Assembly (NCBI RefSeq): GCF_039654945.1
Contig: NW_027361804.1
Location: 4,154,001-4,218,000, forward strand
Origin: Dendrobates tinctorius
Taxonomy: Eukaryota
DNA length: 64,000 bases
Direction of reading: 5' to 3'
The notes beneath the pieces are model-generated. The model searched no databases and was not told where the DNA came from. It saw only the letters and a program-made list of their open reading frames with translations. A program made the position numbers and the translations under genes. Below, in pieces: positions 10,812 through 64,000 of the stretch (position 1 is the stretch's first letter; the number at the start of each line of letters is the position of its first letter).

Positions 10812-11172
10812 CGGTCTTCTCAAATATCTAAAGGATCCGTACCACCTGCAAAAAACCAAGCCTGTGTCTCCTTTAGCAACACAGTATAAGGGGTTAATAT
10901 TTCCGGATGAGTTGCACTAGATATAATTGAGCGGCCGCCAAGCATAAGGTAAACATCACTGAGCGTCTGGGGAGGCGTTACTTACTTCCAAAATGACGGC
11001 ATAGGAGGTGTGGGGTGTCATCACATCCAAATCAGAAACCTCACACTCCAGTAATATAATTCTCAAGAGTTTCATGTACAGGGGGGGGCAAGAAAGGAAA
11101 TATGTGCATGGAAATAAAGTATGTGAACCCCAAGTATTCCTTACACTCCATAAACCTCTGAAAAGATACATA

Positions 11173-26100: not shown

Positions 26101-29100
26101 ACCAGCAGAATAGTGAGTGCAGCTCTGGAATATAATACAGGGTGTAACTCAGGATCAGTAATGTAATGTATGTACACAGTGACTGCACCAGCAGAATAGT
26201 GAGTGCAGCTCTGGAGTATAATACAGGATGTAACTCAGGATCAGTAATGTAATGTATGTACACAGTGACTGCACCAGCAGAATAGTGAGTGCAGCTCTGG
26301 AGTATAATACAGGATGTAACTCAGGATCAGTAATGTAATGTATGTACACAGTGACTGCACCAGCAGAATAGTGAGTGCAGCTCTGGAGTATAATACAGGA
26401 TGTAACTCAGGATCAGTAATGTAATGTATGTACACAGTGACTGCACCAGCAGAATAGTGAGTGCAGCTCTGGCGTATAATACAGGATGTAACTCAGGATC
26501 AGTAATGTAATGTATGTACACAGTGACTGCACCAGCAGAATAGTGAGTGCAGCTCTGGGGTATAATAAAGGATATGTATGGACACAGTATAATTATACGG
26601 GGGTCTTGGCAGTAGATATAATCCGTACTCTTCCAGTGCCCGCTGTCTCTTCTCCCAGGACGGTTCTTCCTTGTAGAGTCTGGTCCCATAGAAATACCAG
26701 TACAAGTTGGCCTCGGAGTCCTCTCCCAGAGGCTCCACGCGCAGACTGTCCCCGTCCAGACCCTAATGATAGAATACATTAATAATTCTACTTTTTTGCC
26801 CTTAACCCTCAGCAGTTTTTAGGGATGGACAGGAGGGGGACGAACCTTAAGGAGTTCGAAGACGTCGTCAGCGTCCAGCCGGTAGTCGCACAGCCGATGC
26901 AGGATCTCCAGGCGGCTGCGCAGCGGCAGCTGGTGGTACGTTGCCCCCTTTAGCGGGTTGGGTTTCCCTTCTTCCAGTTCCCAGCGGTAACTAATGATGT
27001 CCTCCAGGTATATGTGGAAGGTCTGAGGCCTGAGAGCGACAGAGACCGTGAGGAGTTATATGGACAGAGTTGAACTACCTCCGACCTTAAAGGGGTCCTG
27101 CACTTACGTGATGTCGTGCCGCTGATAGCAGCCCTGCAGCAGACAGGCCAGGAGCTCGCCCAGGAACTCCATATCGTCGCGGTACAAGGCATCCTCCAAC
27201 TCCTGGTGCAAAAGCAAGGAAAGGAACATTAGCGGACCGAGGGCGAAACAGCAGCTCACGACATTCTATTGTCCTCAGTTATCAGCCACCAATGTCACCC
27301 TGTAGCAGAGAGATGCAGAATGAAAATTTCACAAAAAATAATGTCCCATAAAAGGCTGGAGATGAGTTCAGGCCCGGGCAGCATCTAAGGGGTTAAAAGT
27401 CCCAGCTGTCAGTGCAGGCGCAGATTTCGCTTACTTCTGCTGTCCTGACTTTAGACAGACAAGGTGGCAGCAGGGGAGGGGCGGCCGGGGGTGGGGGACC
27501 CCCTTACGCATTATGCACGCACATGCAGAAGCCCCTCACACAGCAGAATTAAACAAACAGGGAATGAAAGGAAAGAGTTGATAAAAGAAAAAGCCTTTAA
27601 GAGCGGCCCAGGGCCCTGCGGAGCGCCGGAGACGTACAGAGTCTTCCCGGGGTGAGGAAGACAATGGGCGAGAGACAGAAGAAGGGGGGATCACGCCCCA
27701 TCGCCAACGTCAGGACGCGGACACAACAGGTCATTAGTGACATCGCTCAAGACTGGCAGCCCCCTAAATCAGAGCGATCTGCAGCATCCAGGCACAAGGG
27801 TCTGCCCATCTGTCACCAAATCCTGGCGGAATGGGGGGGCGCTACCACCGCGGCTAAAGCCGCCCACGATCCAACATCAGAACACCATGGTGGAAAAAGC
27901 ATTAATCCGTGTAGTTTTATAAACCTGCGTCCGTAAAGGTATCAACGGCGGCTTCAAAGAGGTTTTCATGAGGCAGCGATGGTGCACAGTTCCATACAGC
28001 GCCAAGTCCTGCTCCACAACTGTCCTAAACCAGAAAAAGGCACAAAACACTCAACTAAGGAAAGAGAAACCAGGATCCATCATTACTGTAAGACATGAAG
28101 ATAGGGAAAATTACTAGAACCTTGAAGGTATCCTCAAGTGCAGTCATGAAACCGGCTCAACAGGAAAGGAAGACCAAGAATGACCTCTGCTGCAGAGGAT
28201 AAGTTCATCAGAGTCATCCGATAAGAAAACGGAAAATCGACAGCACCTCAGATAACATTGTAAATGATGAACCCATATCAAGGAGCAGAAATAGCCTTTA
28301 TGGTCAAAGTGCTGAGAAGAAGCCACCGCTGAGGACCACAAATGATAAGAGACTTGTTTGAGCTAAACAACACAAGGACCGGACTTTAAATCAGTTGAGT
28401 CTATACTGGGGTCCGAAGAGACCAAATTTTTAGTTTTTTTGGTTTCAACCGACACAAAAAAGAGAGAAGTGAATGGTTTCTACATGTGTCGTGCCCACTG
28501 TAAAGTCTGGAGGGGTAGGTGTGATGTTTGTTGGTTAAATCCCCCAGTCACAGGTCTCTCATTCAGTCCTATTAGACGTCTTGCTTTGTACTGATGAGGG
28601 GCAAACATAAGTCTGCAAAAAGAAGTGACGACACGAAAAACTCGGCGGGCTCTCCTGAGTATAAGAGGTCTTGTGTGCACAAGGCCTTACCAAGGGTGGC
28701 CACCGCAGCTTTCTGCAGTAGCCACCATCCCATCTGGTCTCCACTTAGTGTGGATGATAATGCCAGACCCCTCGGGCGCTGTGGCCGAGAAGGAGATCGT
28801 GTTTCCCGTTATATTCCTCCATTCCTGGTTTTGCCGCCTTCAGTCTGAATCTGCACATGCACAATCTAGTATGAACAGGAGAGTCTGGACTTCTCATCAG
28901 TACTGTGGCAGATCTACCCTCCTAGAGCGCAAGGCCTGCGTCAAGATAAGAACCTCTTACAGATGGGTGGTGGGCTTTGGGCTTTTTATGGGTCTTTCCT
29001 CACACAGGTCATCAGAGCAGAGTACGGTCGGGTTCAGACGCCTGCGTTTTCGTTCCGTCTGAGCCCGCTGAGTCTCCTAGCCCTTTCCTCCAGCTCAGAC

Positions 29101-38100: not shown

Positions 38101-40541
38101 TCAGCATTGGGGCCTGATGCTGCCCAGTATGGGGCGGAGAGCTCGGTATTGGGGAAAGATTTTACATACAGAGGTGAATGGCTTAGTATTAGGGGGGCGG
38201 ATGCTGCTCTCAGTAGGGGGGGGGGGGGGGGGGGGAGGAGGCTCAGCACTAGGGTGATGAGCTCAGTATTAGGGGGGCTGGCACTGCTCAGTATGGGGGG
38301 CTCAGTATTAGGGGGCCTGATACTGCTCAGTACAGGGGGGGCTCAGTATTAGGGGGGCTGGCACTGGTCAGTACGGGGGGGCTCAGTATTAGGGGGGCTG
38401 GCACTGGTCAGTACGGGGGGGCTCAGTATTAGGGGGGCTGGCACTGGTCAGTACGGGGGGCTCAGTATTAGGGGGGCTGGCACTGGTCAGTATTAGGGGG
38501 GCTGATACTGCTCAGTATTAGGGGGGCTGAGTATTAGGGGGCTGATACTGCTCAGTATGGGGGGCTCAGTATTAGGGGTGCTGATACTGCTCAGTACGGG
38601 GGGGGATCAGTATTAGGGGGGCTGATACTGCTCAGTATTAGGGGGGCTCAGTATTAGGGGGCTGGCACTGGTCAATACGGGGGGCTCAGTATTAGGGGTG
38701 CTGATACTGCTCAGTACGGGGGGGCTCAGTATTAGGGGGGCTGGCACTGGTCAGTACGGGGGGATCAGTATTAGGGGGGCTGATACTGCTCAGTACGGGG
38801 GGGATCAGTATTAGGGGGGCTGATACTGCTCAGTATTAGGGGGGCTCAGTATTAGGGGGGCTGGCACTGGTCAGTATGGGGGGCTCAGTATTAGGGGTGC
38901 TGATACTGCTCAGTACGGGGGGGCTCAGTATTAGGGGGGCTCAGTATTAGGGCGGCTGATACTGCTCAGTATGGGGGGCTCAGTATTAGGGGGGCTTGCA
39001 CTGCTCAGTATGGGGGGCTCAGTATGGGAGTGGAGGGCTCAGTATTAGGGGGGCTGATACTGCTCAGTATGGGGGGCTCAGTATTGGGGGGCTGATACTG
39101 CTCACTATGGGGGGCTCAGTATTAGGGGGGCTCAGTATTAGGGGGGCTGATACTGCTCAGTATTAGGGGGGCTCCGTATTAGGGGGGCTGACACTGCTCA
39201 GTATTAGGGGGGCTCAGTATTAGGGGGGCTGATACTGCTCAGTATGTGGGGGCTCCGTATTAGGGGGCTGATACTGCTCAGTAGGGGGGGCTCCGTATTA
39301 GGGGGGCTGACACTGCTCAGTATTAGGGGGGCTCAGTATTAGGGGGGCTGATACTGCTCAGTACGGGGGGCTCAGCATTAGGGGGGCTGATACTGCTCAG
39401 TACGGGGGGGCTCAGTATTAGGGGTGCAGATACTGCTCAGTACGGGGGGGCTCAGTATTAGGGGGGATGGCACTGGTCAGTATTAGGGGGGCTGATACTG
39501 CTCAGTATTAGGGGGGCTCAGTATTAGGGGGGCTGATACTGCTCAGTATTAGGGGGGCTGATACTGCTCAGTACGGGAGGCTCAGCATTAGGGGGGCTGA
39601 TACTGCTCAGTACGGGGGGGGCTCAGTATTAGGGGTGCAGATACTGCTCAGTACGGGGGGGCTCAGTATTAGGGGGCTGGCACTGGTCAGTACGGGGGGC
39701 TCAGTATTAGGGGGGGCTGGCACTGCTCAGTACGGGGGGCTCAGTATTAGGGGGGCTGGCACTGCTCAGTACGGAGGGCTCAGTATTAGGGGGGGCTGGC
39801 ACTGGTCAGTACGGGGGGCTCAGTATTAGGGGGGCTGACACTGCTCAGTACGGGGGGCTCAGTATTAGGGGGGCTGACACTGCTCAGTACGGGGGGCTCA
39901 GTATTAGGGGGGCTGACACTGCTCAGTACGGGGGGCTCAGTATTAGGGGGGCTGACACTGCTCAGTACGGGGGGCTCAGTATTAGGGGGGCTGACACTGC
40001 TCAGTACGGGGAGCTCAGTATTAGGGGGGCTGGCACTGCTCAGTACGGAGGGCTCAGTATTAGGGGGGGCTGGCACTGCTCAGTACGGGGGGGGCTCAGT
40101 ATTAGGGGGGCTCAGTATTAGGGGGGCTGGCACCGCTCAGTATTAGGGGGGCTCCGTATTAGGGGGCTGATACTGCTCAGTAGGGGGGGCTCAGTATTAG
40201 GGGGGCTGGCACCGCTCAGTATTAGGGGGGCTCAGTATTAGGGGGGCTGGCACCGCTCAGTATTAGGGGGGCTCAGTATTAGGGGGGCTGGCACTGCTCA
40301 GCATCAGTAGCTCCCATCATCCTCGGAGCATTCGCTCGCTCCGGAGAACTTTCCCCATTGGCCGCCTTTCTGCCCGGACGCCGCCGTCCCCCGGACCCCG
40401 CGCTCAGGCTGCTGTCCCCGGACTCACCTCAATCTCGAAGTCGGGCAACTGGAAGGCGGTGCGGAAAAGGGAGCAGAAGTGCGCGATGGCCGGAACCCGC
40501 CAGCAGGAGCGGAGCTCAGCCAGAGCAGCGTCCGGGGGCAT
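14178..40541 (-). CDS. cecr2: Chromatin remodeling regulator CECR2; 19 coding exons, 3660 nt, 1219 aa
   Basis: Exons 40428-40541, 27108-27202, 26846-27029, 26629-26762, 25565-25651, 25401-25453, 24945-25111, 24679-24762, 24062-24182, 22727-22856, 22607-22650, 22320-22411, 21785-21911, 21340-21701, 18686-18811, 18005-18614, 14942-15968, 14573-14669 and 14178-14183; all GT-AG with matching phases. N-terminus [32 protein letters not shown]-hook KRGRPPKK, bromodomain WPF..APNYY..PMD..NCVKYN, C-terminus LPLDQT*. Confidence 0.94.
14573..14669 (-). CDS. cecr2: cecr2 exon 18
   Basis: [12 protein letters not shown]...PPMLPLDQ; donor gtaagt. Confidence 0.85.
14942..15968 (-). CDS. cecr2: cecr2 exon 17 (large P/Q-rich exon)
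   Basis: Includes [18 protein letters not shown]; ag/gtgtgt boundaries. Confidence 0.87.
16051..17997 (+). repeat. 81/86-bp minisatellite (family B) filling cecr2 intron 16
   Basis: CCAGAGCTGCACTCACTATTCTGCTGGTGCAGTCACTGTGTACATACATTAC(ATTAC)TGATCCTGAGTTACATCCTGTATTATAC, ~23 copies. Confidence 0.97.
18005..18614 (-). CDS. cecr2: cecr2 exon 16
   Basis: Includes QPAMWNGN and [13 protein letters not shown]. Confidence 0.87.
18686..18811 (-). CDS. cecr2: cecr2 exon 15
   Basis: PAAPLKL...[10 protein letters not shown]...FGAQ; strong polypyrimidine acceptor. Confidence 0.8.
18843..21304 (-). repeat. 35-36 bp minisatellite (family A, reverse orientation) filling cecr2 intron 14
   Basis: Reverse complement of the 2838-4986 unit, ~69 copies. 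Confidence 0.97.
21340..21701 (-). CDS. cecr2: cecr2 exon 14
   Basis: [21 protein letters not shown]...HPRDT. Confidence 0.9.
21785..21911 (-). CDS. cecr2: cecr2 exon 13 (bromodomain)
   Basis: [12 protein letters not shown]...[12 protein letters not shown]. Confidence 0.95.
21949..22275 (+). repeat. 27-bp GC-rich minisatellite in cecr2 intron 12
   Basis: GAGAGGAGACGGGCAGCCGCCGGAGGC x12, identical copies. Confidence 0.97.
22320..22411 (-). CDS. cecr2: cecr2 exon 12 (bromodomain)
   Basis: [30 protein letters not shown]. Confidence 0.95.
22607..22650 (-). CDS. cecr2: cecr2 exon 11
   Basis: [14 protein letters not shown]; donor gtgagt. Confidence 0.88.
22727..22856 (-). CDS. cecr2: cecr2 exon 10
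   Basis: [28 protein letters not shown]. Confidence 0.92.
22915..24040 (+). repeat. Degenerate modular repeat in cecr2 intron 9
   Basis: Recurrent GCACATACTGCACA core with shuffled linker modules. Confidence 0.85.
24062..24182 (-). CDS. cecr2: cecr2 exon 9
   Basis: [25 protein letters not shown] (coiled-coil-like). Confidence 0.9.
24679..24762 (-). CDS. cecr2: cecr2 exon 8
   Basis: [16 protein letters not shown]...RQE; symmetric phase-0 exon, donor gtgagc. Confidence 0.72.
24945..25111 (-). CDS. cecr2: cecr2 exon 7
   Basis: [21 protein letters not shown]...[12 protein letters not shown]. Confidence 0.9.
25401..25453 (-). CDS. cecr2: cecr2 exon 6
   Basis: [17 protein letters not shown]; restores the phase between exons 5 and 7. 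Confidence 0.78.
25565..25651 (-). CDS. cecr2: cecr2 exon 5 (AT-hook)
   Basis: [14 protein letters not shown]; phases match neighbours. Confidence 0.88.
25757..26567 (-). repeat. 86-bp minisatellite (family B, reverse orientation) filling cecr2 intron 4
   Basis: Reverse complement of the 16051-17997 unit, ~9.5 copies. Confidence 0.97.
26629..26762 (-). CDS. cecr2: cecr2 exon 4
   Basis: [33 protein letters not shown]. Confidence 0.9.
26846..27029 (-). CDS. cecr2: cecr2 exon 3
   Basis: [26 protein letters not shown]...[12 protein letters not shown]. Confidence 0.93.
27108..27202 (-). CDS. cecr2: cecr2 exon 2
   Basis: [32 protein letters not shown]. Confidence 0.93.
28040..28530 (+). mobile_element. 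Old Tc1-like transposase fragment
   Basis: [15 protein letters not shown]-like motif at ~28168-28212 and degenerate Tc1-like coding remnants; no TIRs seen. Confidence 0.6.
32890..35192 (+). repeat. C-rich 34/41-bp minisatellite in cecr2 intron 1
   Basis: ACTCAGGACCCCATAATACCAATAAGCCCCC(ACCCCCC)AAT. Confidence 0.96.
35293..35523. mobile_element. Palindromic MITE (T2/Kolobok-like AGG...CCT termini)
   Basis: AGGCTATGTGCACACGCTGCGG ... CCGCAGCGTGTGCACATAGCCT, perfect 22-bp TIR. Confidence 0.85.
35665..37680 (+). repeat. 43-bp CpG-dense minisatellite in cecr2 intron 1
   Basis: GACGTATCGGTGACGATCGGGATCTTACACCGAGGCCCCGCGT, ~47 copies, 7 CpG per unit. Confidence 0.97.
37760..40300 (+). repeat. G-run-rich ~39-bp minisatellite in cecr2 intron 1
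   Basis: CTCAGTATTAGGGGGGCTGACACTGCTCAGTACGGGGGG, degenerate at its left edge. Confidence 0.94.
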
Positions 40542-40705
40542 CCCGAGGGCAGCACCCCGAGCCCGGACACAGCGTGCAGGAGAGCGGCCACAATGTGAGC
40601 CCCGGCCGGGGAGGAACAGATGGGCTGTGGGCGGGACCGAGGCAGGACACCGCCCACTGCACGAGGAACACCACGCCCCCAGCCCGAGCACAGAGGGAAC
40701 AGAGC
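40320..40705 (-). promoter_or_regulatory. CpG island / cecr2 promoter-exon 1 region
   Basis: GC- and CpG-rich segment around the first coding exon, with GGGCGG-type boxes. Confidence 0.65.
40428..40541 (-). CDS. cecr2: cecr2 coding exon 1 (DDT start)
   Basis: [38 protein letters not shown]; donor gtgagt. Confidence 0.92.
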
Positions 40706-42820
40706 AACAAGAGTAATAGTGACGTCATCACTGACAGGAACAAGAGTAATAGTGACGTCATCACTGAGAGTAACAAGAGCAATAGTGACGTCATCACTGA
40801 CAGGAACAAGAGTAATAGTGACATCATCACTGAGAGTAACAAGAGCAATAGTGACGTCATCACTGACAGGATCAAGAGTAATAGTGACGTCATCACTGAG
40901 AGTAACAAGAGTAATAGTGACGTCATCACTGACAGTAACAAGAACAATAGTGACATCATCACTGAGAGTAACAAGAGTAATAAGTGACATCATCACTGAG
41001 AGTAACAAGAGTAATAGTGACATCATCACTGAGAGTAACAAGAGTAATAGTGACATCATCACTGAGAGTAACAAGAGCAAAAGTGACATCATCACTGAGA
41101 GTAACAAGAGTAATAGTGACGTCATCACTGACAGGATCAAGAGTAATAGTGACGTCATCACTGAGAGTAACAAGAGTAATAGTGACATCATCACTGAGAG
41201 TAACAAGAGTAATAGTGACATCATCACTGAGAGTAACAAGAGTAATAGTGACATCATCACTGAGAGTAACAAGAGTAATAGTGACATCATCACTGAGAGT
41301 AACAAGAGTAATAGTGACGTCATCACTGAGAGTAACAAGAGTAATAGTGACATCATCACTGAGAGTAACAAGAGTAATAGTGACATCATCACTGAGAGTA
41401 ACAAGAGTAATAGTGACATCATCACTGACAGGATCAAGAGTAATAGTGACATCATCACTGAGAGTAACAAGAGTAATAGTGACATCATCACTGACAGGAT
41501 CAAGAGTAATAGTGACGTCATCACTGAGAGTAACAAGAGCAATAGTGACATCATCACTGAGAGTAACAAGAGTAATAGTGACATCATCACTGAGAGTAAC
41601 AAGAGTAATAGTGACGTCATCACTGAGAGTAACAAGAGCAATAGTGACATCATCACTGAGAGTAACAAGAGTAATAGTGACGTCATCACTGACAGGATCA
41701 AGAGTAATAGTGACGTCATCACTGAGAGTAACAAGAGTAATAGTGACGTCATCACTGAGAGTAACAAGAGTAATAGTGACGTCATCACTGAGAGTAACAA
41801 GAGTAATAGTGACATCATCACTGACAGGATCAAGAGTAATAGTGACGTCATCACTGAGAGTAACAAGAGTAATAGTGACGTCATCACTGACAGTAACAAG
41901 AGCAATAGTGACATCATCACTGAGAGTAACAAGAGTAATAGTGACGTCATCACTGACAGTAACAAGAGTAATAGTGACGTCATCACTGACAGTAACAAGA
42001 GCAATAGTGACGTCATCACTGACAGTAACAAGAGCAATAGTGACGTCATCACTGACAGGATCAAGAGTAATAGTGACATCATCACTGACAGGAACAAGAG
42101 CAATAGTGACATCATCACTGACAGTAACAAGAGCAATAGTGACGTCATCACTGACAGGATCAAGAGTAATAGTGACATCATCACTGACAGGAACAAGAGC
42201 AATAGTGACATCATCACTGACAGGATCAAGAGTAATAGTGACGTCATCACTGAGAGTAACAAGAGTAATAGTGACGTCATCACTGAGAGTTACAAGAGTA
42301 ATAGTGACATCATCACTGACAGGATCAAGAGTAATAGTGACATCATCACTGACAGGAACAAGAGCAATAGTGACATCATCACTGAGAGTAACAAGAGTAA
42401 TAGTGACGTCATCACTGAGAGTAACAAGAGTAATAGTGACGTCATCACTGAGAGTAACAAGAGTAATAGTGACATCATCACTGACAGGATCAAGAGTAAT
42501 AGTGACGTCATCACTGAGAGTAACAAGAGTAATAGTGACGTCATCACTGAGAGTAACAAGAGTAATAGTGACGTCATCACTGACAGGATCAAGAGTAATA
42601 GTGACGTCATCACTGAGAGTAACAAGAGTAATAGTGACGTCATCACTGACAGTAACAAGAGCAATAGTGACGTCATCACTGACAGTAACAAGAGCAATAG
42701 TGACGTCATCACTGACAGGATCAAGAGTAATAGTGACATCATCACTGACAGGAACAAGAGCAATAGTGACATCATCACTGACAGGATCAAGAGTAATAGT
42801 GACGTCATCACTGAGAGTAA
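40705..42820 (+). repeat. 33-bp minisatellite containing the CRE palindrome, immediately upstream of cecr2
   Basis: AACAAGAGTAATAGTGAC(G/A)TCATCACTGAGAGT; 64 units counted from the translated track. Confidence 0.97.
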
Positions 42821-43545
42821 TATCTCTGATGTTAATATTAACAGCACTAAAATCATTATCAATTATATTAATATAATAATTTATGTTATCAGTACTACAA
42901 GACTAAAGAGAAATATCATTAATACTAAGTAATAGAATAGTAATAATCAAAGTCCTATAATAATACATTAATAATCTTATTACCATTATCAGTAATACTA
43001 GAGTTTTAGTTAAAATAATAATACTAATCACATCTCTTGTACCACAGTAATAATTACAATAATTATATTTTTGCAATCAATAGTACAGGAATAATAAAGT
43101 TACAATATCATCACTAATACTATAGCTGTCATAATAATCACAGTAACAGTATGAATTGTAACAAATAATACTAATATAATAATTAGTAATAATGATATAA
43201 CTAATTGTAAACAATGACAGAGGTAATAACAATTATAATAATACCATCACTAATGCTGTAAAAATGACAGCAATAATACTGATAACTAAAAATACAATAA
43301 TATGAGTTATAGTATTAGTTATAGTATTAGTAGTAGCAGTAAAAGTAACAATACAATTCAGTTTATCATCATTAATATTATTTCCACAAAAATACTCATA
43401 ACACCAAAGCTAATATGAGAATAATTATATTAATAATATGTTGATAAATACCAGTGTAATAATCACAGTAATTAACAAACTAAAAAAACAATAATAGCAG
43501 TATGAATACTCCCATCAATAATTCCAGAGCAGCTATCATACTTAT

Positions 43546-44207
43546 TGTCATGGTTTGAACAGGGTTCTTGCCCTGCACTCACAGGGTTAAGTATTTGTGG
43601 CCCCTTCTGGATCTGGGAGGGGTATTTATACTCGCTCTTTACCAGGGTTCCCTGTTAGCTATACTGTTGTTCTGGTGTGTCTGACCCCTGGTGTGCGTGT
43701 ATTCTGCATTGCTTGTTTGATTCCCGTGTATGACCCGGTCCGTTCCCTCACTCTGTTCTCCGTCTCTTGCTTTGGTATTATTGTCTTCTCCGGTTCTGAC
43801 CTCCTGGCTTGGCTATCGTTACTCCGTCACAGTTTGTCCCTATTGTACTGTCCATTGCCCGTTCTGGTTTTCTGATCTATTGCTACGTCCTGACTATTTG
43901 CTCTGTCTAACCCTTTGGTACTGTCCTGCTATCTCGTGCTTTGACCCCGGCTTGATCTGGTTTCTGTCTTTGTCTATGCCCCTTGGTAACATTGTCCTGT
44001 AGTTACCTTTCTAGGAGATTTCCTTCAGCTCCTCGCTCTGTGGCGCTGAGGCCACTCCCCCAGCAGTCACGTGATTCAGGTCCTGTGAGCTTGGAGCATG
44101 CACTGTCACCACTGAGACCCCGCTCCGCAGGTATCTTTGAGCACTGTCTTTGTACTCAGGACACCCGCACTGGCTCAGTGAGCAAGTGCAGTGCGGTGTT
44201 CCTGACA
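43546..44207 (+). repeat. 5' LTR
   Basis: Direct repeat of 48806-49470; TATA-like TATTTATA at 43623-43630. Confidence 0.96.
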
Positions 44208-44269
44208 TTATAGCTAACCGTTTCAGGTTTTTTTTTCCTCTGAAGGAAAAAAAAAAGTGTGTTATCCTC

Positions 44270-45524
44270 ATGGATCCCATACAAGCTTTGGCTGATCAGG
44301 TCAAGCACCTGACCCAAATGTTCCACAGACTTAATGTGGAACAGCGCACGATGGCCCAGACCCAGCACCAGTTGGTGGTTACTGTGCAGGGGGCTGTCGC
44401 TGCAGGGGCTTCTAGTGCTGGGGATAGTGATGTGTCATTGGCATCCCCCGAATCTCCGGTCAAATTGCCAGACCCTTTCTCAGGGGATAAAAGTGAGTTC
44501 AGGTCGTTCAGAGAAGGATGCAAGTTTTTTTTTTCTCTGAGGCCCCGCTCCTCCGGGGATGAGTTCCAGAGGGTGGGGGTTGTCATTTCCCTACTTCGGG
44601 GGGCTCCACAGGCATGGGCTTTCTCTCTCTCTTCCTCTGCTCCTGAACGTATGTCTGTGAATTTGTTCTTTGAGGCTCTGGGGCACATTTATGATGAGCC
44701 TGATAGAGTGCGTCTGGCAGAGGATATGGTGATGAGTGTGACACAGGGGAGGCACTCTGCTGAATGGTTCTGCTCTGAGTTCAGACGCTGGGCAGCGGAG
44801 GTCTCCTGGGATGATGCTGCCCTCCGGGGTTTGTTCTGTAGAGGCCTGTCTGAACGTTTGAAAGATGCCCTAGCCCTTCATCCTCCACCGGATTCTTTGG
44901 AGGACGCTATGATCCAGGCTGTCCGCATGGACCGTAGGCTGCAGGCAAGAGGGGTCATGCTGCAGGAGACCCCTTTATTCTCCAATCTGAGAGACTCTGC
45001 ATCTAGTCCTGAGCCCATGGAGGTTGGTGCCACGTCATTGGAGGAAAAAGAGAGGAGACACCGAAGAAACAACCAATTGTGCTCATACTGTGGATCCGCT
45101 GGACATTGGAGAAGGAACTGTCCTTCTTGCCCTTCTTCAGTGAAGCCGTCAGGAAAACGACTGAGTCTGGGTAACAATCGAGGAGGTTGCCCAGACTCCC
45201 AGGTACCCTTTTCCTCACTTACTAAAATTCTGCTTCCGGTGGAACTAGAACTTACAGGCGGTCCGGTTGGGACTACCGCCTTTGTTGACTGTGGTTCTTC
45301 TATTAATCTGATCGATGCCAAAGTTGTGACTTTTCATAAGATAGGGACAGTCAGGTTAAAAGATCCTGTTAAAATTGTGGCAATTGATTCTTCTCCTATC
45401 ACCCAGGAGGGAATTTGTTTCATGACTGATACCTTTTCTCTGAAAGTGGGTCCCACTCGCGTGGAAAAATTAAGGTGTTTTGTTCTAAATTATCTGCCGG
45501 CTGGACTGGTACTGGGTATGCCTT
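44270..45524 (+). pseudogene. gag-protease portion of the polyprotein (cut by a SINE)
   Basis: MDPIQALADQV..., retrotransposon gag motif LPDPFSGD, CCHC knuckle CSYCGSAGHWRRNC, protease AFVDCGS. Confidence 0.92.
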
Positions 45525-45662
45525 AATAATCTTATAATAATAATCTTTTTTTTTATATAGCGCTAACATATTCCGCAGCGCTTTACAGTTTGCACACATT
45601 ATCATCACTGTCCCCGATGGGGCTCACAATCTAAATTCCCTATCAGTATGTCTTTGGAGTGT

Positions 45663-45693
<31 letters not shown>

Positions 45694-45811
45694 ACGCAAA
45701 CACGGGGAGAACATACAAACTCCTTGCAGATGTTGTCCTTGGTGGGATTCGAACCCAGGACCCCAGCGCTGCACTTGCAGCGCTAACCACTGAGCCACCA
45801 TGCTGCCCATG
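45525..45811 (-). mobile_element. tRNA-derived V-SINE with L2-type tail
   Basis: A box TGGCTCAGTGG, B box GGTTCGAATCC, V-domain-like GTTCTCCCCGTGTTTGCGTGGGTTTCCTCCGGG; 7-bp TSD ATGCCTT at 45518-24 and 45812-18. Removing it restores LGMPWLQRHNP. Confidence 0.93.
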
Positions 45812-45818
45812 ATGCCTT

Positions 45819-48794
45819 GGCTTCAACGTCACAATCCTACTATTGACTGGGTCACGGGGGAGATCATTCAGTGGGGTTGTATGACTAACGGTCTAGGTTG
45901 TAACTTGACAACTCTTGTCACCCCAGTAAAATCTGTGTCAGTGTCGTCTGTCGATCTGGAAGGTATTCCGGAGTACCTGAAAGATTTTGAAGACGTATTT
46001 TCTGGTGCCAAGGTGAGGATGAGGCGCTACCACCACATAGACCCTTTGACCTTTGATTGTGCCATTAATCTAGTCCCTGGAGCCAAGTTACCCAAGGCTC
46101 GCCTGTTCAATTTGTCCGGGCCCGAACGTCTAGCCATGAAGGAGTACATTACCGAGAGTCTCCGCAAAGGGCATATTAGGCCTTCTCTTTCACCTGTGGT
46201 GGCGGGCTTCCTTTTTTGTTAAGAAAAAAGATGGTGGTTTGCGGCCGTGCCTCGACTTTCGGGAATTAAAATTACTATGAAAAATACATACCCTCTCACC
46301 CTAATTCCTGACCTATGTAACCAACTCACCGGGGCCAAGTAGTTCTCTAAACTGGATTTACGTGGGGCATATAACCTTATAAGAGTCCGGGAAGGGGACG
46401 AATGGAAAACAGCATTCCTGACGACTGAAGGGCTGTTCGAAAACTTGGTTATGCCCTTTGGTCTCACCAACACTCCTGCTGATTTTCAGAATTTTATTAA
46501 TGTAATTTTCTCTGATTTAATTGGTCGTTTTGTGGTCATCTATTTGGATGACATTCTGGTGTACTCGGTGGACAGTCAATCTCACTTGCACCATTTGCGG
46601 ATGGTTCTCATGAGACTGAGGGAGAATCATTTGTATGCCAAGTTGGAAAAATGCTCATTTTTCATGCAAGAAGTATCCTTTCTGGGGTTGATTATGTCAG
46701 GGGAGGGGTTCCGCATGGATCCTAAGGAGGTCCAGGCTGTTACAGATTGGGTGCAGCCTCATGACTTGAAAGGGTTGCAGCGATTTTTAGGCTTTGCTAA
46801 CTGTTATAGGAAATTTATTAAGGGCTTCACGCAGGTGGTAAAGCCTCTAACGGACCTCACTCTCAAGGGAGCTGATGTAAAAAATTGGTCTGTAGCTGCA
46901 AAAAATTCTTTCATGACATTAAAAAAGTGCTTTTCTTCAGCCCCTGTATTGGTACAACCCGACCCGTCAAGACCTTTTATCGTGGAGGTTGACGCCTCGG
47001 AAGTAGGGGTGGGGGCAGTTTTGTCTCAGGGTCCGCCTACCCTTACTAATCTGAGGCCTTGCGCCTTCATCTCTAAAAAATGTTCCTCTGCCGAGAGAAA
47101 TTACGATGTCGGCAATAGAGAGTTGTTGGCGGTAAAGTTGGCTTTTGAAGAATGGAGGCATTTCCTGGAGGGGGCTATTCATCCCATTACAGTCATCACT
47201 GATCACAAAAATTTGGCCTATATCGAGTCTGCCAAGAGATTGACCCCCAGACAGGCTCGGTGGGCGCTTTTTTTTTTCTCGATTTCAGTTTACCATCACA
47301 TTCCGCCGGGTTCTAAAAACATCAAGGCTCATGCCTTATCCCGAAGCTTTGATTCGGTGTCCCCTCCAGAACCTCCCTCCTTCTTTCTTCAGCCAGGAGT
47401 AGTGGTGGCCGAAATCTCTTCGGAGTTACAGAGAGAAATTTTGGTGGCCCAGGCTCGGGCTCCTGGTGGTAAACCCCCGGGTAAATTGTTTGTACCGAAA
47501 CGTTTCCATCTCGGACTTATGCAGGAATTTCACGATTCTATGTTGAGTGCTCACCCTGGGATTGCAGCTACCCGGGGGGGCAAGTGCGAGGGGTTTCTGG
47601 TGGCCCTCTATGGTAACAGATATTAAAAAGTTTGTGACTGCATGTGGGGTGTGCGCTCTTTCTAAAAGTTCTCAGGTCCGTCCGTCCGAGGAGTTGGTGC
47701 CTTTGCCAATTCCGGATAGACCATGGACACATTTGTCCATGGATTTTATCACAAATCTTCCTCCTTCCAGGGGCAACTCGGTGATATGGGTGGTGGTGGA
47801 TAGGTTTTCAAAACAAGCCCACTTTGTACCTCTCCCCACGTTACCATCTGCTGAAACCCTGGCCCGCTTATTTATGCAGCATATAATTCGGTTGCATGGA
47901 GTGCCTATGAATGTGGTGTCAGACAGAGGGGTACAGTTTGTAGCCAGGTTCTGGAGGGCTTTTTGCAAAAAGCTGGGGATTTCGTTGTCCTTCTCCTCTG
48001 CCTACCACCCAGAGTCTATAGGACAGACGGAGCGCATAAACCAATCGTTGGAGCAGATTATGAGATGCTTGGCCTCTTCCAGGCAGGAGGACTGGTGTGA
48101 GGTATTGCCCATGGCAGAGATTGCATTCAACGGTCGTGTGAGTCAATCTACTGGGAAGTCTCCCTTTCAGATCAACTATGGGTTTAACCCACATTTTGGA
48201 GAGTTTTCCCGCATGGATTCAGGTTGTCCTGGAGCTGAGGGTGCGACACAACGTCTTAGAATTCTTTGAAGGGAGGTTCAGAGGAATATTTCCAAGGCCC
48301 AGGAAAACTATAAGCGGTTTGCTGACAGGAGGAGGGGGCCAGGTCCAGCATTTGCAGTAGGGGAGAAGGTGTGGCTATCCACCCGCAATATCAAGCTTAA
48401 GATACCATCTAGCAAGCTGGGCCCCAAGTTTACTGGCCCATACAAAGTTGTGGAGGTTGTTAACCCAGTAGCCTACCGACTGCAGCTGCCCACCTCCTTT
48501 AAAATTTCTGATGTCTTCCACAGGTCCCTGTTAAAGCCTGTGGAGACGGTGGTAGAGGATCCCTCATCAAATGCTCCGCCAGTGCTGGTAAAGGGGCAGC
48601 TGGAGTATGAAGTAGGGCGCATTGTTGACTCCCGGAGGGTGTGCTGGAGACTCCAGTATCTGATACACTGGAAGGGGTACTCTCTGGAGGATCGGTCATG
48701 GGTTCCGGCCAGTTCGGTGCATGCCGATCGTCTGGTGCGGGCTTTCCACGCCAGATACCCAGACAAGCCTGGGGGTCCAGTGGCCCCCTGTTAA
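45819..48794 (+). pseudogene. pol remnant: RT, RNase H, integrase, chromodomain; several frameshifts and stops
   Basis: MPFGL, YLDD (46541), VDASEVGVGAVL, TDHKNL, H..HPG..C..C, SMDF/SDRG/QTER, GPY, YEVGRIVDSR..YLIHWKGY..RSW. Confidence 0.93.
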
Positions 48795-48805
48795 GAGGGG
48801 GGTAC

Positions 48806-49470
48806 TGTCATGGTTTGAACAGGGTTCTTGCCCTGCACTCACAGGGTTAAGTGTTCGTGGCCTCTTTCTGGATCTGGGAGGGGTATTTATACTCACTCTT
48901 TACCAGGGTTCTCTGTCAGCTATACTGTTGTTCTGGCTGTGTGTCTGACCCCTGGTGTGCATGTATTCTGCATTGCTTGTTTGCTTCCCGTGTACGACCC
49001 GGTCCGTTCCCTCACTCTGTACTCTGTTTCTCATTTCGGCACTATTGTCTTTTCCGGTTCTGACCTCCTTGCTTGGCTATCGTTACTCCGTTACAGTTTG
49101 TCCCTATTGTACCGTCTATTGCCCGTTCTGGTTTTCTGATCTATTGCTACGTCCTGACTATCCATTCTCTCTGACCCTTTGGTACTGTATTGCTATCTCG
49201 TGCTTTGACCCGGCTTGATCTGGTTTCTGTCTCTGTCTATGCCCCTTGGTTACACTGTCCAGTAGTTACCTTTCTAGGAATTTCCCTGCAGCTCCTCGCT
49301 CTGTGGCACTGAGGCAACACCCCCAGCAGTCACGTGCTTCAGGTCCTGTGAGTTTGGAGCATGCATTGTCACCACTGAGACCCCGCTCCGCAGGTATCTT
49401 TGTGCACAGTTTTTGTACTCAGGACACGCGCACTGGCTCAGTGAGCAAATGCAGTGCGGTGTTCCTGACA
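48806..49470 (+). repeat. 3' LTR
   Basis: Follows the PPT; about 92% identical to the 5' LTR by hand count. Confidence 0.96.
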
Positions 49471-49499
49471 CTTATAATAGAAGTAATAAAATATTAAAA

Positions 49500-51862
49500 A
49501 CTATACTACTGCTCATAATAACCCCAATACTAATAATACTGATAATAACCCCCAATACTAATAATAATACTGATAATCCCCAATACTAATAATACTACTG
49601 ATAATAACCCCAATACTAATAATAGTACTGATAATAACCCCCAATACTAATAATACTACTGATAATAACCCCCAATACTAATAATACTACCGGTAATAAC
49701 CCCCAATATTAATAATACTACTGATAATAACCCCCAATACTAATAATACTACTGATAATAACCCCAATACTAATAATACTACTGATAACCCCCAATACTA
49801 ATAATACTTCTGATAATAACCCCAATACTAATAATACTACTGATAACCCCCAATACTAATAATACTTCTGATAATAACCCCAATACTAATAATACTACTG
49901 GTAATAACCCCCAATACTAATAATACTTCTGATAATAACCCCCCCAATACTAATAATACTACTGATAACACCCCAATACTAATAATGCGACTGATAGGCC
50001 CCAATACTAATAATACTACTGATAATAACCCCAAATACTAATAATACTACTGGTAATAACCCCCAATACTAATAATACTACTGGTAATTACCTCCAATAC
50101 TAATAATACTACTGGTTATTACCTCCAATACTAATAATACTACTGATAATAACCCCCAATACTAATAATACTACCGGTAATAACCCCCAATATTAATAAT
50201 ACTACTGATAATAACCCCCAATACTAATAATACTACTGATAATAACCCCAAATACTAATAATACTACTGGTAATAACCCCCAATACTAATAATACTACTG
50301 ATAATAACCCCGATACTAATAATACTACTGGTAATAACCCCAATACTAATAATACTACTGATAATAACCCTCAATACTAATAATACTACTGATAACACCC
50401 CAATACTAATAATACTACTGATAATAACCCCCAATACTACTGATAACACTCCAATACTAATAATACTACTGATAATAACCCCCAATACTAATAATACTAC
50501 TGATAATAACCCCAATACTAATAATAATACTGATAACCCCCAATACTAATAATACTACTGGTAATAACCCCCAATACTAATAATACTACTGATAATACCC
50601 CCAATACTAATAATACTACTGATAATAACCCCAATACTAATAATACTACTGATAATAACCCTCAATACTAATAATACTACTGATAACACCCCAATACTAA
50701 TAATACTACTGGTAATAACCCCCAATACTAATCATACTATTGGTAATAACCCCCAATACTAATAATACTTCTGATAATAACCCCAATACTAATAATACTA
50801 CTGGTAATAACCCCCAATACTAATAATACTTCTGATAATAACCCTCAATACTAATAATACTACTGATAACACCCCAATACTAATAATGCGACTGATAAGC
50901 CCCAATACTAAATACTACTGATAATAACCCAAAATACTAATAATACTACTGGTAATAACCCCCAATACTAATAATACTACTGGTAATTACCTCCAATACT
51001 AATAATACTACTGGTAATTACCTCCAATACTAATAATACTTCTGATAATAACCCCCAATACTAATAATACTACTGATAATAACCCCCAATACTAATAATA
51101 CTACCGGTAATAACCCCCAATATTAATAATACTACTGATAATAACCCCCAATACTAATAATACTACTGATAATAACCCCAAATACTAATAATACTACTGA
51201 TAATAACCCCCAATACTAATAATACTACTGGTAATAACCCCCAATACTAATAATACTACTGATAATAACCCCAAATACTAATAATACTACTGATAATAAC
51301 CCCAAATACTAATAATACTACTGGTAATAACCCCCAATACTAATAATACTACTGATAATAACCCCCGATACTAATAATACTACTGGTAACCCCCAATACT
51401 AATAATACTACTGATAATAACCCCCAATACTACTGATAACACCCCAATACTAATAATACTACTGATAATAACCCCCAATACTAATAATACTACTGATAAT
51501 AACCCCAAATAATAATAATACTACTGGTAATAACCCCCAATACTAATAATATTACTGGTAACCCCAATACTAATAATACTACTGATAATAACCCCCGATA
51601 CTAATGATACTACTGGTAATAACCCCCAATACTAATAATACTACTGGTAACCCCAATACTAATAATACTACTGATAATAACCCCCAATACTAATAATACT
51701 ACTGGTAACCCCAATACTAATAATACTACTGATAATTACCCCCAATACTAATAATACTACTGGTAACCCCAATACTAATAATACTACTGGTAATAACCAC
51801 CAATACTAATATTACTATTGATAACCTCCAATACTAATAATACTACTGATAATAACCTCCAA
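49500..51862 (+). repeat. AT-rich ~30-bp satellite, left part
   Basis: AATAACCCCCAATACTAATAATACTACTGAT. Confidence 0.96.
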
Positions 51863-52699
51863 TGTTGTGAGTTCATTTTTCTCTGTTATGATGAGTCACC
51901 AAAGGAGGAAAAAACAAAATACCAGCGTCCAGAAAAACCAGAGAGGTTGGCAGCTATCGGATTGCAGACCCCTGAACCTATCCACAACAACTAGCAGTAG
52001 CCGTGGGGGGTTCCTACGGTGCCCTAGACCCCTCGATCACAGCCGGAGAACTACATAGCCTAAAGACAGAAAGGGGAAAAACTAAACTTCCCCAGAGCAG
52101 ATCCCAAAGCAATAGGCAGCCCCAGCATATAATGACGGTGAAGCAAGATGAAAACACTAACACAGATAGAAAGATAGGTTGAGCAAATGATGGGGCCCAA
52201 GCTAACTACATAGGACAGGATAGGAAAGCTGCTGTTTGCCATCCGCAAAAACCCTATCAAAATGAGCCAACCGACTGATAGGAAAAACAGGCCCTGAAGT
52301 CGCTAGGCTTCAAAAGACTATATCAGCACTCAGGTATATTCTGAAGACAAAGCAAAAGATCAACAGATCAGAGACAAAAATGGAATTCAGCTCACCCCCG
52401 GCCGGGGATGGCAGAACTCCCAAAAAACAAGGCAAAACAAAAACAAAACTGAAGAGTACAAAGCAGAGCAGAAAAACTTAGCTTTGAGATGCAGGAATCA
52501 GACTGGTCTCCAAGAATCCAGCAGGAAAATCACCAGCCAGGAAGAAGGGCGTCGGCGGCCTTATATCCAGTCCTCAATTCCAGCCATCCAGTCATCATCT
52601 AGCTGCCCAGGTGTTTGGTAATCAGCCTCACCACCTTCCTTCACCAGAGGAGGGAGTTCATCAGACCTCAATGGTGAAGGGAAAAATGAACTCACAACA

Positions 52700-53532
52700 G
52701 TACCTCCCCCTTGAGGAGGGGTCACCGAACCCTCATCCATGCCACCAGGGCGATCCGGGTGAGCCCGATGAAAGGCACGCACCAATCTTTCGGAATGAAT
52801 ATCAGAGGCAGAGACCCAGGAATTATCCTCCTGACCATAACCCTTCCACTTAACCAAATACTGGAGTCTCCGTCTAGCCAGACGGGAATCCAGTATCTTC
52901 TCTACCTCATATTCCATGTTACCTTCAACCAATATAGGGTCAGGAGGTGCCACCACAGGAACTACTGGTTCAACAAACCTCTTCAACAAGGACTTATGAA
53001 ACACATTATGAATTTTAAATGTGACAGGAAGAGCCAACCGAAAAGAGACCGGATTAATAATCTCCAAAATCTTGTAAGGTCCAATAAATCTAGGCTTAAA
53101 CTTAGGAGAAGCCACCTTCATAGCGATATTTTTTTATGACAACCAAACCATATCACCCACCTTAAACTGGGGACCAACGGTCCTACGCCGGTTGGAAAAC
53201 CGCTGGGCCTTTTCCTGGGAGAGAGACAACTTATCCACTACTTGGTCCCAGATCTGGTGCATTCTCTCCAACACAGTGTCAACACCTGGACAGGCAGAAG
53301 GCTCCACCTGCCCTGAAGAAAATCGAGGGTGAAAACCAAAGTTACAAAATAAAGGTGACATCAAAGTGGCAGAACTAGCTCTATTATTTAAAGCAAATTC
53401 GGCCAAGGGCAAAAATGAAACCCAATCATCCTGATCGGCAGAAATAAAACATCTCAAATACGACTCCAAAATCTGGTTTGTTCTCTCCGTCTGCCCATTG
53501 GTCTGAGGGTGGAACGCAGAGGAGAAGGACAG
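52700..53532 (-). pseudogene. Integrase C-terminus plus chromodomain (inverted fragment)
   Basis: SSAFHPQTNGQTER, FIGPYKI, YEVEKILDSR..YLVKWKGYGQEDNSW; one frameshift near 53130. Confidence 0.9.
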
Positions 53533-53684
53533 CAGAATCACCAGCCATACCGCAGATCCTAGGGTACTCAATAGCAGCAGAGAATTGTAAAAAGAAAAAA
53601 AAAAAAAGTGTCAGAATTTTTTTTTTTTTGTGTGCATATTTTTTCCTCTATATCTCTGAGGCCGTAGGGGGAATTTTTCTCTCA

Positions 53685-54608: not shown

Positions 54609-54678
54609 CCAACCTCTCTGGTTTTTCTGGACTTAGCTGGTATTTTGTTTTTTCCTCCTTTGGTGACTCATCATAACA

Positions 54679-63500: not shown

Positions 63501-64000
63501 TCCTGTATATATATACTGCACAGTACCACTCCTCCTGTATATATACACTGCACAGTACCACTCCTCCTGTATATATATACTGCACAGTACCATTCCTCCT
63601 GTATATATATACTGCACAGTACCACTCCTCCTGTATATATATACTGCACAGTACCATTCCTCCTGTATATATATACTGCACAGTACCACTCCTCCTGTAT
63701 ATATACACTGCACAGTACCACTCCTCCTGTATATATACACTGCACAGTACCACTCCTCCTGTATATATACACTGCACAGTACCACTCCTCCTGTATATAT
63801 ACACTGCACAGTACCACTCCTCCTGTATATATACACTGCACAGTACCACTCCTACTGTATATATACACTGCACAGTACCACTCCTCCTGTATATATACAC
63901 TGCACAGTACCGCTCCTCCTGTATATATATACTGCACAGTACCGCTCCTCCTGTATATATACACTGCACAGTACCGCTCCTCCTGTATATATATACTGCA
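60591..64000 (+). repeat. 32-bp minisatellite running off the window
   Basis: TATATATACACTGCACAGTACCACTCCTCCTG, >100 copies. Confidence 0.97.

What the first reader, a model, noticed from the sequence alone, without database searches (positions are those of the whole stretch)
40705..42820. A 2.1-kb array of CRE palindromes sits at the cecr2 promoter
Seen: a 33-bp unit repeated 64 times starts about 165 bp upstream of the cecr2 ATG, abutting the CpG island. By my count 34 units carry the perfect palindrome TGACGTCA and 30 carry TGACATCA. Established: TGACGTCA is the full CREB/ATF site, CpG methylation blocks CREB binding, and CG>CA is the product of methyl-C deamination on the opposite strand. 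Inference: this looks like a natural multimerised CRE enhancer whose strength could be tuned by copy number, intact/mutant ratio and methylation, upstream of a chromatin remodeller needed for neural tube closure in mouse. It may have grown from one ancestral promoter CRE, or it may be a methylated, inert satellite.
Basis: partly seen in the sequence, partly recalled or inferred. Interest (0 to 1): 0.75.

Follow-up and report, generated by a model that had tools for sequence, protein, structure and literature searches.

The report
Poison-frog cecr2 promoter CRE minisatellite
A 64-copy DNA repeat carrying a cAMP-response motif sits just upstream of the poison-frog cecr2 gene and is shared by related poison frogs, but its size and motif content differ so much between species that most of it looks like an ordinary fast-evolving repeat, not a tuned enhancer.

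Summary
The window is Dendrobates tinctorius. A spliced RNA contig puts the transcript 5' end about 96 bp from the array.

The same array lies between the same flanks in three other dendrobatids:
- Ranitomeya imitator: 147 units, 98 intact.
- R. variabilis: 125 units, 86 intact.
- Phyllobates terribilis: at least 296 units, with only the promoter-nearest unit intact.

Five non-dendrobatid frogs have no CRE or half-CRE at this promoter. So the array did not grow from an old promoter CRE, and the bulk CREs are dispensable. The variant always sits on the same strand in all species, which points to one old mutation spread by array turnover rather than 30 separate deaminations. TGACATCA is itself a documented ATF2 site. 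Tandem arrays make up 43% of the window.

Best reading: a locus-specific minisatellite evolving in concert, in which at most the few units nearest the promoter act as CREs.

New here: eight of nine frogs, including Xenopus and Discoglossus, carry some minisatellite ending 160-330 bp upstream of this conserved promoter.

No methylation, binding or reporter data were available. The scan has noted other CRE-bearing minisatellites elsewhere in this genome.

The parts
40701..42820 (-). 33-bp minisatellite, 64 units. In gene orientation the unit is CAGTGATGACGTCACTATTACTCTTGTTACTCT. 34 units carry TGACGTCA and 30 carry TGATGTCA (TGACATCA on the + strand).
   Evidence: orthologous arrays in L003, L004, L007 and L008
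40720..40727 (.). Promoter-nearest intact CRE, 186 bp upstream of the ATG and about 118 bp upstream of the observed transcript 5' end. It is kept at -184 to -191 in all four dendrobatids, and in Phyllobates it is the only intact CRE.
40606..40700 (-). GC-rich, TATA-less proximal promoter with GC boxes. The block GCAGTGGGCGGTGTC is conserved in hyloid frogs. No RNA contig depth was seen here.
40542..40605 (-). Observed 5' UTR (at least 64 nt). It includes CTCACATTGT (40590-40599), which is invariant across the eight frogs aligned in A1.
   Evidence: spliced contig of run X10; alignment A1
40428..40541 (-). cecr2 exon 1 coding part (38 aa), with the GT donor at 40427-40426.
27108..27202 (-). cecr2 exon 2.
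   Evidence: (the loose end of the RNA contig equals the start of exon 2)
26846..27029 (-). cecr2 exon 3.
42821..43560 (.). AT-rich spacer, nearly free of CpG, distal to the array. Its array-side part is orthologous to the distal flank of the R. variabilis array.
43675..49470 (+). LTR retroelement: LTR-like repeats at 43675-44207 and 48939-49470, and gag/protease/RT/RNase H/integrase ORFs at 44150-48269. It lies between the spacer and the 31-bp array. Ranitomeya has only 1-2.5 kb between the 33-bp and 31-bp arrays, too little to hold it.
49495..51863 (-). 31-bp minisatellite, C-poor on the gene's sense strand. It is homologous to the array that abuts the cecr2 promoter in Rhinoderma darwinii.
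   Evidence: (z 11.6)
38180..40330 (-). Intron-1 minisatellite of 39-41-bp units that starts about 100 bp downstream of exon 1. It is syntenic in Ranitomeya and Phyllobates.

Best explanation
The array is a locus-specific minisatellite that evolves in concert. It arose in the dendrobatid lineage inside a repeat-prone zone that lies just upstream of the deeply conserved, TATA-less cecr2 core promoter in frogs.

Its 33-bp unit happens to contain a full CRE. Units are gained, lost and homogenised by unequal exchange and gene conversion. As a result, copy number (64 to at least 296) and the share of intact CREs (53%, about 67%, about 69%, about 0.3%) drift apart between species.

The bulk of the array is not maintained as a CRE enhancer. 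At most, the few units nearest the promoter (four intact CREs and one TGACATCA lie within 250 bp of the observed transcript 5' end) give cecr2 a lineage-specific CREB/ATF input.

Shown: the anatomy, orthology across species, turnover, the single-strand variant, absence of the CRE in outgroups, and the transcript 5' end near the array. Inferred: neutrality of the bulk, and any activity of the proximal units.
For: 1. The same unit occurs between the same promoter-side flank in D. tinctorius, R. imitator, R. variabilis and P. terribilis. The distal flank is also shared by D. tinctorius and R. variabilis. Contigs of a relative about 5% diverged bridge the promoter and the first unit.
2. Species-specific unit variants are nearly fixed within each array, for example CCTG in R. 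variabilis and ACTCT versus ACTAT. That is concerted evolution. Blocks of several units are duplicated inside the array.
3. Intact CREs number 34/64, 98/147, 86/125 and 1 of at least 296. In Phyllobates only the edge unit keeps TGACGTCA.
4. The variant is always TGATGTCA in gene orientation (0 of 30 on the other strand in D. tinctorius, and the same strand in all species) and sits on all unit backgrounds.
5. High-frequency variant positions are as common in the 8-bp CRE slot as in the rest of the unit. CG and TG units show no gradient along the array.
6. Five non-dendrobatid frogs lack any CRE or half-CRE at the promoter.
7. Tandem arrays cover 43% of the window and 40-71% of the dendrobatid loci.
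8. A spliced exon1-exon2 RNA contig ends at 40605, with no depth from 40606 to 40700. In gene orientation each unit carries an ATG, so a start site upstream of the array would put 64 upstream ATGs in the 5' UTR.
Against: - The intact CpG-containing palindrome is still the majority unit in three of four species. If the array is methylated in the germline, that needs either low methylation, GC-biased gene conversion or selection.
- The promoter-nearest CRE is kept in all four species, including Phyllobates, where its flanks have diverged. That hints at constraint on that unit, but I estimate a chance of about 0.1-0.3 under neutrality, so the hint is weak.
- TGATGTCA/TGACATCA can still bind ATF2/c-Jun-type dimers, so Phyllobates may not have lost all bZIP binding.
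- No methylation, chromatin, binding or reporter data were available.
Confidence: 0.55

Rival explanations
1. One reading: the whole array is a natural multimerised CRE enhancer of cecr2, and its strength is set by copy number, intact/variant ratio and methylation.
For: There are 34 perfect CREs, the first about 118 bp from the transcript 5' end. The array has been kept at this promoter in four dendrobatids. The intact CRE is the majority unit in three species. Tandem repeats with tens of homotypic TF motifs can be strong enhancers (PMC13373173).
Against: Phyllobates keeps 1 intact CRE out of at least 296 units, and R. variabilis has 24% GGACGTCA units. The CRE slot is not less variable than the rest of the unit. 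Outgroup frogs have no CRE at this promoter. The array is AT-rich with low CpG density and lies next to a CpG-depleted spacer. From general knowledge, CREs far from the start site are rarely occupied.
Confidence: 0.12
2. The array is a silenced homotypic bZIP-motif cluster. It is methylated or held closed, as MORC3/DAXX-restricted tandem repeats are in mammals. It would then act as a latent enhancer, a local heterochromatin block or a factor sink rather than a constitutive activator.
For: MORC3 restricts tandem repeats carrying up to 61 homotypic motifs, including AP-1 clusters (PMC13373173). CpG methylation of the CRE blocks CREB binding (PMC7532970). The array has low GC and borders a spacer with CpG o/e of 0-0.15. 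Its RNA signal is negligible: a collapsed-unit contig has depth 4.6 for 64 units, against 4.4 for exon 1.
Against: The CpG has survived in most units of three species, which argues against long-term heavy germline methylation unless gene conversion restores it. Nothing here measures chromatin state. MORC3-type restriction has not been shown in amphibians.
Confidence: 0.13
3. What matters is the presence of a tandem array at this position, not its sequence. The array zone would be kept as a spacer or boundary, or would be a by-product of a stable promoter recombination hotspot, and the CRE would be incidental.
For: An array of at least 500 bp ends 160-327 bp upstream of the ATG in 8 of 9 frog species, with unrelated or unrecognisably diverged units. 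The local background chance of that is 0.3-4.7% per lineage. Outside the 33-bp unit, these arrays share a sense strand poor in C. PRDM9 was not found in amphibians, and recombination then targets promoter-like features with stable hotspots (PMC5519329).
Against: Bufo gargarizans has no such array. The background density was taken from whole loci and may understate the density of arrays next to promoters in general; other promoter-side arrays are noted in this genome. Homology between the arrays is shown only for the dendrobatid 31-bp array and the Rhinoderma array.
Confidence: 0.12
4. The array is a copy of a dispersed satellite or a repeat carried by a transposable element, or an assembly artefact, with no specific tie to cecr2.
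For: The genome is packed with minisatellite families that recur within the window. An LTR retroelement lies 0.8 kb away.
Against: The unit occurs only at this site in the window and in four dendrobatid loci of 46-80 kb. Both flanks are orthologous between genera. Summed word depth over the units is about 170-600 times the single-copy flank in three other samples, not 10^4 or more (the tool warns that depth is not a copy number). Independent assemblies of four species show it.
Confidence: 0.03

Closest known systems
Promoter-proximal VNTRs/minisatellites that modulate transcription (e.g. insulin VNTR, MAOA-uVNTR; genome-wide human VNTR-expression associations, PMC8096271)
   Same: Head-to-tail units of tens of bp next to a promoter, with variable copy number and interspersed unit variants. 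An effect on expression through copy number is plausible.
   Different: Each unit here carries a perfect 8-bp palindromic CRE. Variation is documented between species only, not within a population, and no expression association is known.
Tandem-repeat enhancers with homotypic transcription-factor motif clusters restricted by MORC3 (PMC13373173)
   Same: Tens of copies of one TF motif supplied by a tandem repeat. AP-1-type bZIP clusters are among the reported classes.
   Different: Those are mammalian, lie distal to the gene and are shown to be repressed and then activated. Here the cluster abuts the core promoter in a frog, and its chromatin state is unknown.
Canonical promoter CREs (somatostatin-type TGACGTCA) and synthetic multimerised CRE reporters
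   Same: The exact full-site palindrome. The first four intact sites lie within 250 bp of the observed transcript 5' end.
   Different: Natural CRE promoters have one to a few sites. Here there are 64 slots spread over 2.1 kb, mostly beyond the distance at which CREs usually work. The CRE is absent from the same promoter in other frog families.
ATF2/c-Jun variant CRE TGACATCA (E-selectin PDII site TGACATCATTG, PMC4973847)
   Same: On the + strand the 30 variant units read TGACATCATCA, the same 9-mer core as the E-selectin site.
   Different: Binding has not been tested. In this array the variant arose by a CpG transition inside a CRE.

Membership tests
Minisatellite / VNTR | Head-to-tail tandem units of about 10-100 bp | tested here: met
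   Period 33, 64.2 copies, 93% matches
Minisatellite / VNTR | Copy number varies at an orthologous locus | tested here: met
   64, 147, 125 and at least 296 units in four species between orthologous flanks. Within-species variation was not tested.
Minisatellite / VNTR | Interspersed unit variants and concerted evolution | tested here: met
   17 unit types, block duplications, and species-specific variants that are nearly fixed
cAMP response element (functional CRE) | Full palindrome TGACGTCA or half-site TGACG/CGTCA | tested here: met
   34 full sites
cAMP response element (functional CRE) | Position close to the start site (roughly within 250 bp; general knowledge of CREB target promoters) | tested here: inconclusive
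   Four intact sites and one variant lie within 250 bp of the RNA contig end at 40605. The other 59 slots lie further away, and the true start site is not mapped.
cAMP response element (functional CRE) | Unmethylated central CpG, CREB/ATF occupancy and cAMP inducibility | not testable with these tools
   No methylation, ChIP or reporter data. All served runs were contigs.
cAMP response element (functional CRE) | Evolutionary conservation of the site | tested here: inconclusive
   The proximal site is kept in four dendrobatids. It is absent in five other frogs, and the bulk sites are lost in Phyllobates.
Genome-wide satellite / TE-borne repeat | The same unit at many unrelated loci | tested here: not met
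   Found only at this site in the window and in four loci. The depth ratio is about 170-600 (rough). No whole-genome search was possible.
CpG island | GC above 0.5 and CpG o/e above 0.6 over more than 200 bp | tested here: not met
   The array has GC 0.38-0.41 and o/e 0.17-0.57. Only the adjoining 40250-40749 qualifies, with GC 0.65 and o/e 0.73.
Homotypic-motif tandem-repeat enhancer (MORC3-restricted type) | Tens of copies of one TF motif in a tandem repeat | tested here: met
   64 bZIP-type sites
Homotypic-motif tandem-repeat enhancer (MORC3-restricted type) | Restricted accessibility with latent enhancer activity | not testable with these tools
   No chromatin data

The most novel reading that the evidence does not exclude
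A minisatellite has adjoined the conserved cecr2 core promoter since early anuran history, with position kept and sequence replaced, because an array at that spot does something or marks a stable promoter recombination hotspot. In poison frogs the array was rebuilt from a unit carrying a CRE. Living species now form a natural series of a promoter-side bZIP-site cluster, from about 0.3% to about 70% intact CREs and from 64 to about 300 units, that measurably changes cecr2 regulation.
Probability: 0.15. Interest if true: 0.75.

Novelty: new member of a known kind. Interest (0 to 1): 0.42.

Why it matters
Promoter-side VNTRs and tandem repeats that multiply one transcription-factor motif are known regulators, so the kind is not new. 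What this locus offers is a clean comparative system. One orthologous array at the promoter of a neurulation gene now has four sequenced states: 64, 125, 147 and about 300 units, with 53%, 69%, 67% and 0.3% intact CREs. Five outgroup frogs lack the motif. That makes it directly testable whether motif number in a repeat matters.

Two further points follow. A minisatellite ending 160-330 bp upstream of the same conserved promoter in eight of nine frogs across Anura is an unexplained regularity, and it bears on how repeats arise at promoters in PRDM9-less vertebrates. And in a genome where 43% of a window is minisatellite, a striking motif inside a repeat unit is weak evidence of function on its own.

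Tried and rejected
- Pfam on the exon-1, exon-2 and exon-3 peptides gave nothing above cut-off. The ESM Atlas gave only a weak DDT lead for exon 1 and nothing for exon 3. A PDB sequence search gave nothing. Gene identity was settled instead by the exhaustive HMMER search and named orthologues.
- Long ORFs run through the array on both strands (770 aa and 619 aa). I rejected them as coding: 33 bp is 11 codons, the frames are simply free of stops, and the minus-strand one is not in the cecr2 frame.
- Deep homology of the 33-bp unit was not shown. The Discoglossus unit shares a 12-mer with it (z 4.9; nhmmer best E 0.03), but unrelated control pairs reach z 4.6-4.9. The AT-rich spacer and the 31-bp array gave no significant match. 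The origin of the unit is unresolved.
- A gradient of intact CREs towards the CpG island (protection from methylation) was not seen in D. tinctorius.
- Rfam found no family in 38000-44500.
- The sequence look-up in earlier findings was blank.
- Three encoding-contig look-ups (Anomaloglossus, Dendropsophus, Engystomops) found no record.
- Literature searches found no paper on a CRE minisatellite, on CECR2 regulation by CREB, or on tandem repeats of the D. tinctorius genome.
- Because read laying turns away long repeats, I gave it only 40331-40766 (promoter plus two units). Depth over the full array was therefore not measured.

Full report
**The observation.** Tandem Repeats Finder reports a single array at 40701-42820 with period 33, 64.2 copies and 93% matches. 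Counting the CRE slot gives 64 sites, 62 spaced 33 bp apart and one spaced 34. Of these, 34 are TGACGTCA and 30 are TGACATCA. None is TGATGTCA on the + strand, and every TGACGTCA in the 64-kb window lies in the array.

**The gene and its start.** The minus strand holds an ATG at 40541, followed by 38 codons and a GT donor. Exons 2 (27108-27202) and 3 (26846-27029) follow.
- Pfam did not recognise the short exon peptides.
- An exhaustive HMMER search with exon 3 hit proteins named CECR2. Their full-length forms carry the bromodomain.
- The spliced 131-aa N-terminus is 131/131 identical to CECR2 of Dendrobates tinctorius, 130/131 to Ranitomeya and 128/131 to Phyllobates terribilis.
- The D. tinctorius assembly locus (L008) carries the identical array, so the window is that genome.
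- In run X10, a 360-nt contig covers 40427-40605 and then continues into the exon 2 sequence. This is a spliced transcript whose 5' end lies 96 bp from the array edge, with no depth over 40606-40700.
- That end sits 5 nt upstream of CTCACATTGT, a 10-mer invariant in the eight frogs aligned.
- In gene orientation every unit contains an ATG. A start site beyond the array would therefore load the 5' UTR with 64 upstream ATGs.

The array is promoter-proximal. Four intact CREs and one variant lie within 250 bp of the observed 5' end. Because read laying turns away long repeats, I gave it only the promoter and two units.

**Context.** The window holds 15 tandem arrays that together cover 43% of it. 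One begins about 100 bp downstream of exon 1. Distal to the 33-bp array comes a 740-bp AT-rich spacer that is nearly free of CpG, then an LTR retroelement, then a 31-bp array. Earlier notes of this scan list other CRE-bearing minisatellites in this genome (LRRC36, DUSP16, P3H3, SYT11) and other promoter-side arrays. A 33-bp unit has roughly a 5 in 10,000 chance of holding a given 8-mer. With arrays this dense, a CRE-bearing array somewhere in the genome is expected.

**Comparative evidence.** I fetched the cecr2 locus, with 10 kb upstream, from nine frog species. The same 33-bp unit forms an array ending 159-177 bp upstream of the ATG in the four dendrobatids:

| Species | Units | TGACGTCA | Other forms (gene orientation) |
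|---|---|---|---|
| D. tinctorius | 64 | 34 | 30 TGATGTCA |
| R. imitator | 147 | 98 | 22-23 TGATGTCA |
| R. variabilis | 125 | 86 | 30 GGACGTCA, 7 TGATGTCA |
| P. terribilis | at least 296 (runs off the locus) | 1 | 236-269 TGATGTCA |

- The promoter-side junction aligns across all four species.
- The distal flank aligns between D. tinctorius and R. variabilis.
- Contigs from two other samples, about 5% diverged, bridge the promoter into the first unit.
- The one intact CRE of Phyllobates is the promoter-nearest edge unit at -191. The equivalent site is at -186, -185 and -184 in the other three species.
- In Bufo gargarizans, Rhinoderma darwinii, Mantella aurantiaca, Discoglossus pictus and Xenopus laevis there is no TGACGTCA in 10 kb upstream and no half-CRE in 1 kb upstream.

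The CRE therefore came with the dendrobatid repeat unit, not from an older promoter site.

**How the array evolves.**
- In gene orientation the variant is always TGATGTCA. Independent deamination of a palindromic CpG should hit both strands about equally.
- In D. tinctorius the variant occurs on every unit background, and it is on the same strand in all four species.
- The simplest account is one old transition spread by unequal exchange and conversion. It is fixed in Phyllobates and polymorphic in the others.
- Species-specific unit variants are nearly fixed within arrays, and blocks of several units are duplicated. That is concerted evolution.
- High-frequency variant positions are no rarer in the 8-bp CRE slot (4 of 32 position-by-species cells, 3 of them at the CpG) than in the other 25 positions (about 10 of 100).
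- In D. tinctorius intact units do not cluster towards the promoter.

I see no sign of selection keeping the bulk CREs. Survival of the edge CRE in Phyllobates hints at constraint or at an unmethylated island shore, but by my estimate it could happen by chance 10-30% of the time.

**What the sites could bind.** TGACGTCA is the full CRE, and methylation of its CpG blocks CREB (PMC7532970). The variant is not null: TGACATCATTG is the ATF2 site of the E-selectin promoter (PMC4973847). Tandem repeats carrying up to 61 homotypic motifs, including AP-1 clusters, are known in mammals as MORC3-repressed latent enhancers (PMC13373173). A large bZIP cluster could therefore be silenced rather than active. 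None of this could be tested here.

**Is the unit dispersed?** It occurs only at this site in the window and in the four dendrobatid loci. Summed word depth over the units is roughly 170-600 times that of the single-copy flank in three samples. That fits one array of a few hundred units, although the tool warns that depth is not a copy number.

**An unexpected regularity.** An array of at least 500 bp ends 160-327 bp upstream of the cecr2 ATG in eight of nine species, including Xenopus (26-bp unit), Discoglossus (61-bp), Mantella (86-bp) and Rhinoderma (63-bp). Only Bufo lacks one.
- From the array density of each locus, the chance of an array end falling in such a 200-bp window is 0.3-4.7% per lineage.
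- The Rhinoderma array is homologous to the dendrobatid 31-bp array (z 11.6). Other unit pairs are not demonstrably related.
- The non-dendrobatid arrays and the 31-bp array share a sense strand poor in C (C 4-13%). The 33-bp unit does not.
- PRDM9 was not found in amphibians, and without it recombination targets promoter-like features at stable hotspots (PMC5519329). That could explain why arrays persist beside a conserved promoter. This is inference.

**Verdict.** The most likely account (0.55) is a locus-specific, concertedly evolving minisatellite whose unit happens to hold a CRE, in which at most the promoter-nearest units act as CREs. The tunable whole-array enhancer (0.12), a silenced motif cluster (0.13) and a sequence-independent role of the array zone (0.12) remain open. 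A dispersed repeat or an artefact is unlikely (0.03).

Noticed in passing
window 35666-37679: The intron-1 minisatellite of 43-bp units (47 copies, 98% matches) is CpG-rich (GC 0.64, CpG o/e about 1.55) and carries TGACG half-sites. The orthologous 41-bp array in both Ranitomeya species has TpG/CpA where D. tinctorius has CpG. So an orthologous array is CpG-island-like in one genus and decayed in the other.
   Followed up: partly
window 43675-49470: An LTR retroelement (LTR-like repeats 91-93% identical, gag/protease/RT/RNase H/integrase ORFs) sits between the AT-rich spacer and the 31-bp array. Ranitomeya has only 1-2.5 kb between the two arrays, so this looks like a Dendrobates-lineage insertion. 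A second gag-like ORF lies at 53478-54935, next to another 31-bp array.
   Followed up: partly
window 40590-40599 (minus strand CTCACATTGT): This 10-mer is invariant in the eight frog species aligned, from Discoglossus to dendrobatids, and the X. laevis promoter has TCACATTGT at the same place. It lies in a conserved core promoter block (CCCATCTG...CTCACATTGT...CGCACGCTGTGT...CTCGGGATG). The RNA contig's 5' end is 5 nt upstream of it.
   Followed up: partly
window 60592-64000 and L005 5345-6852: The 32-bp array at the end of the window is clearly related (reverse complement, z 15) to part of the 77-bp array 3.1-4.6 kb upstream of cecr2 in Bufo gargarizans. This could be a shared minisatellite family or a syntenic remnant.
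   Followed up: no
L001-L010, 160-330 bp upstream of the cecr2 ATG: Eight of nine frog species have a tandem array of at least 500 bp ending just upstream of the conserved cecr2 promoter, with different units. Bufo gargarizans has none. In several species the locus lies within a few percent of a chromosome end (R. imitator, R. variabilis, X. laevis, Rhinoderma), but it is internal in Bufo and Mantella, where the array is absent or small.
   Followed up: partly
window 2840-4985, 9322-10812, 18843-21304; 16051-17998, 25759-26573: Two minisatellite families recur within and beside the cecr2 gene body in opposite orientations: 35-36-bp units, and 81-86-bp units.
   Followed up: no
window about 6100 downwards (L008 44429-46364): A mitochondrial-carrier (Mito_carr) gene follows cecr2 on the same strand. 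From memory, this matches the CECR2-SLC25A18 neighbourhood of mammals.
   Followed up: no
window 40701-40766, run X10: An RNA run holds a 63-nt contig made purely of array units, at depth 4.6. Spread over 64 or more units this is about 1-2% of the exon-1 level, which fits background or nascent RNA rather than a transcribed array.
   Followed up: partly
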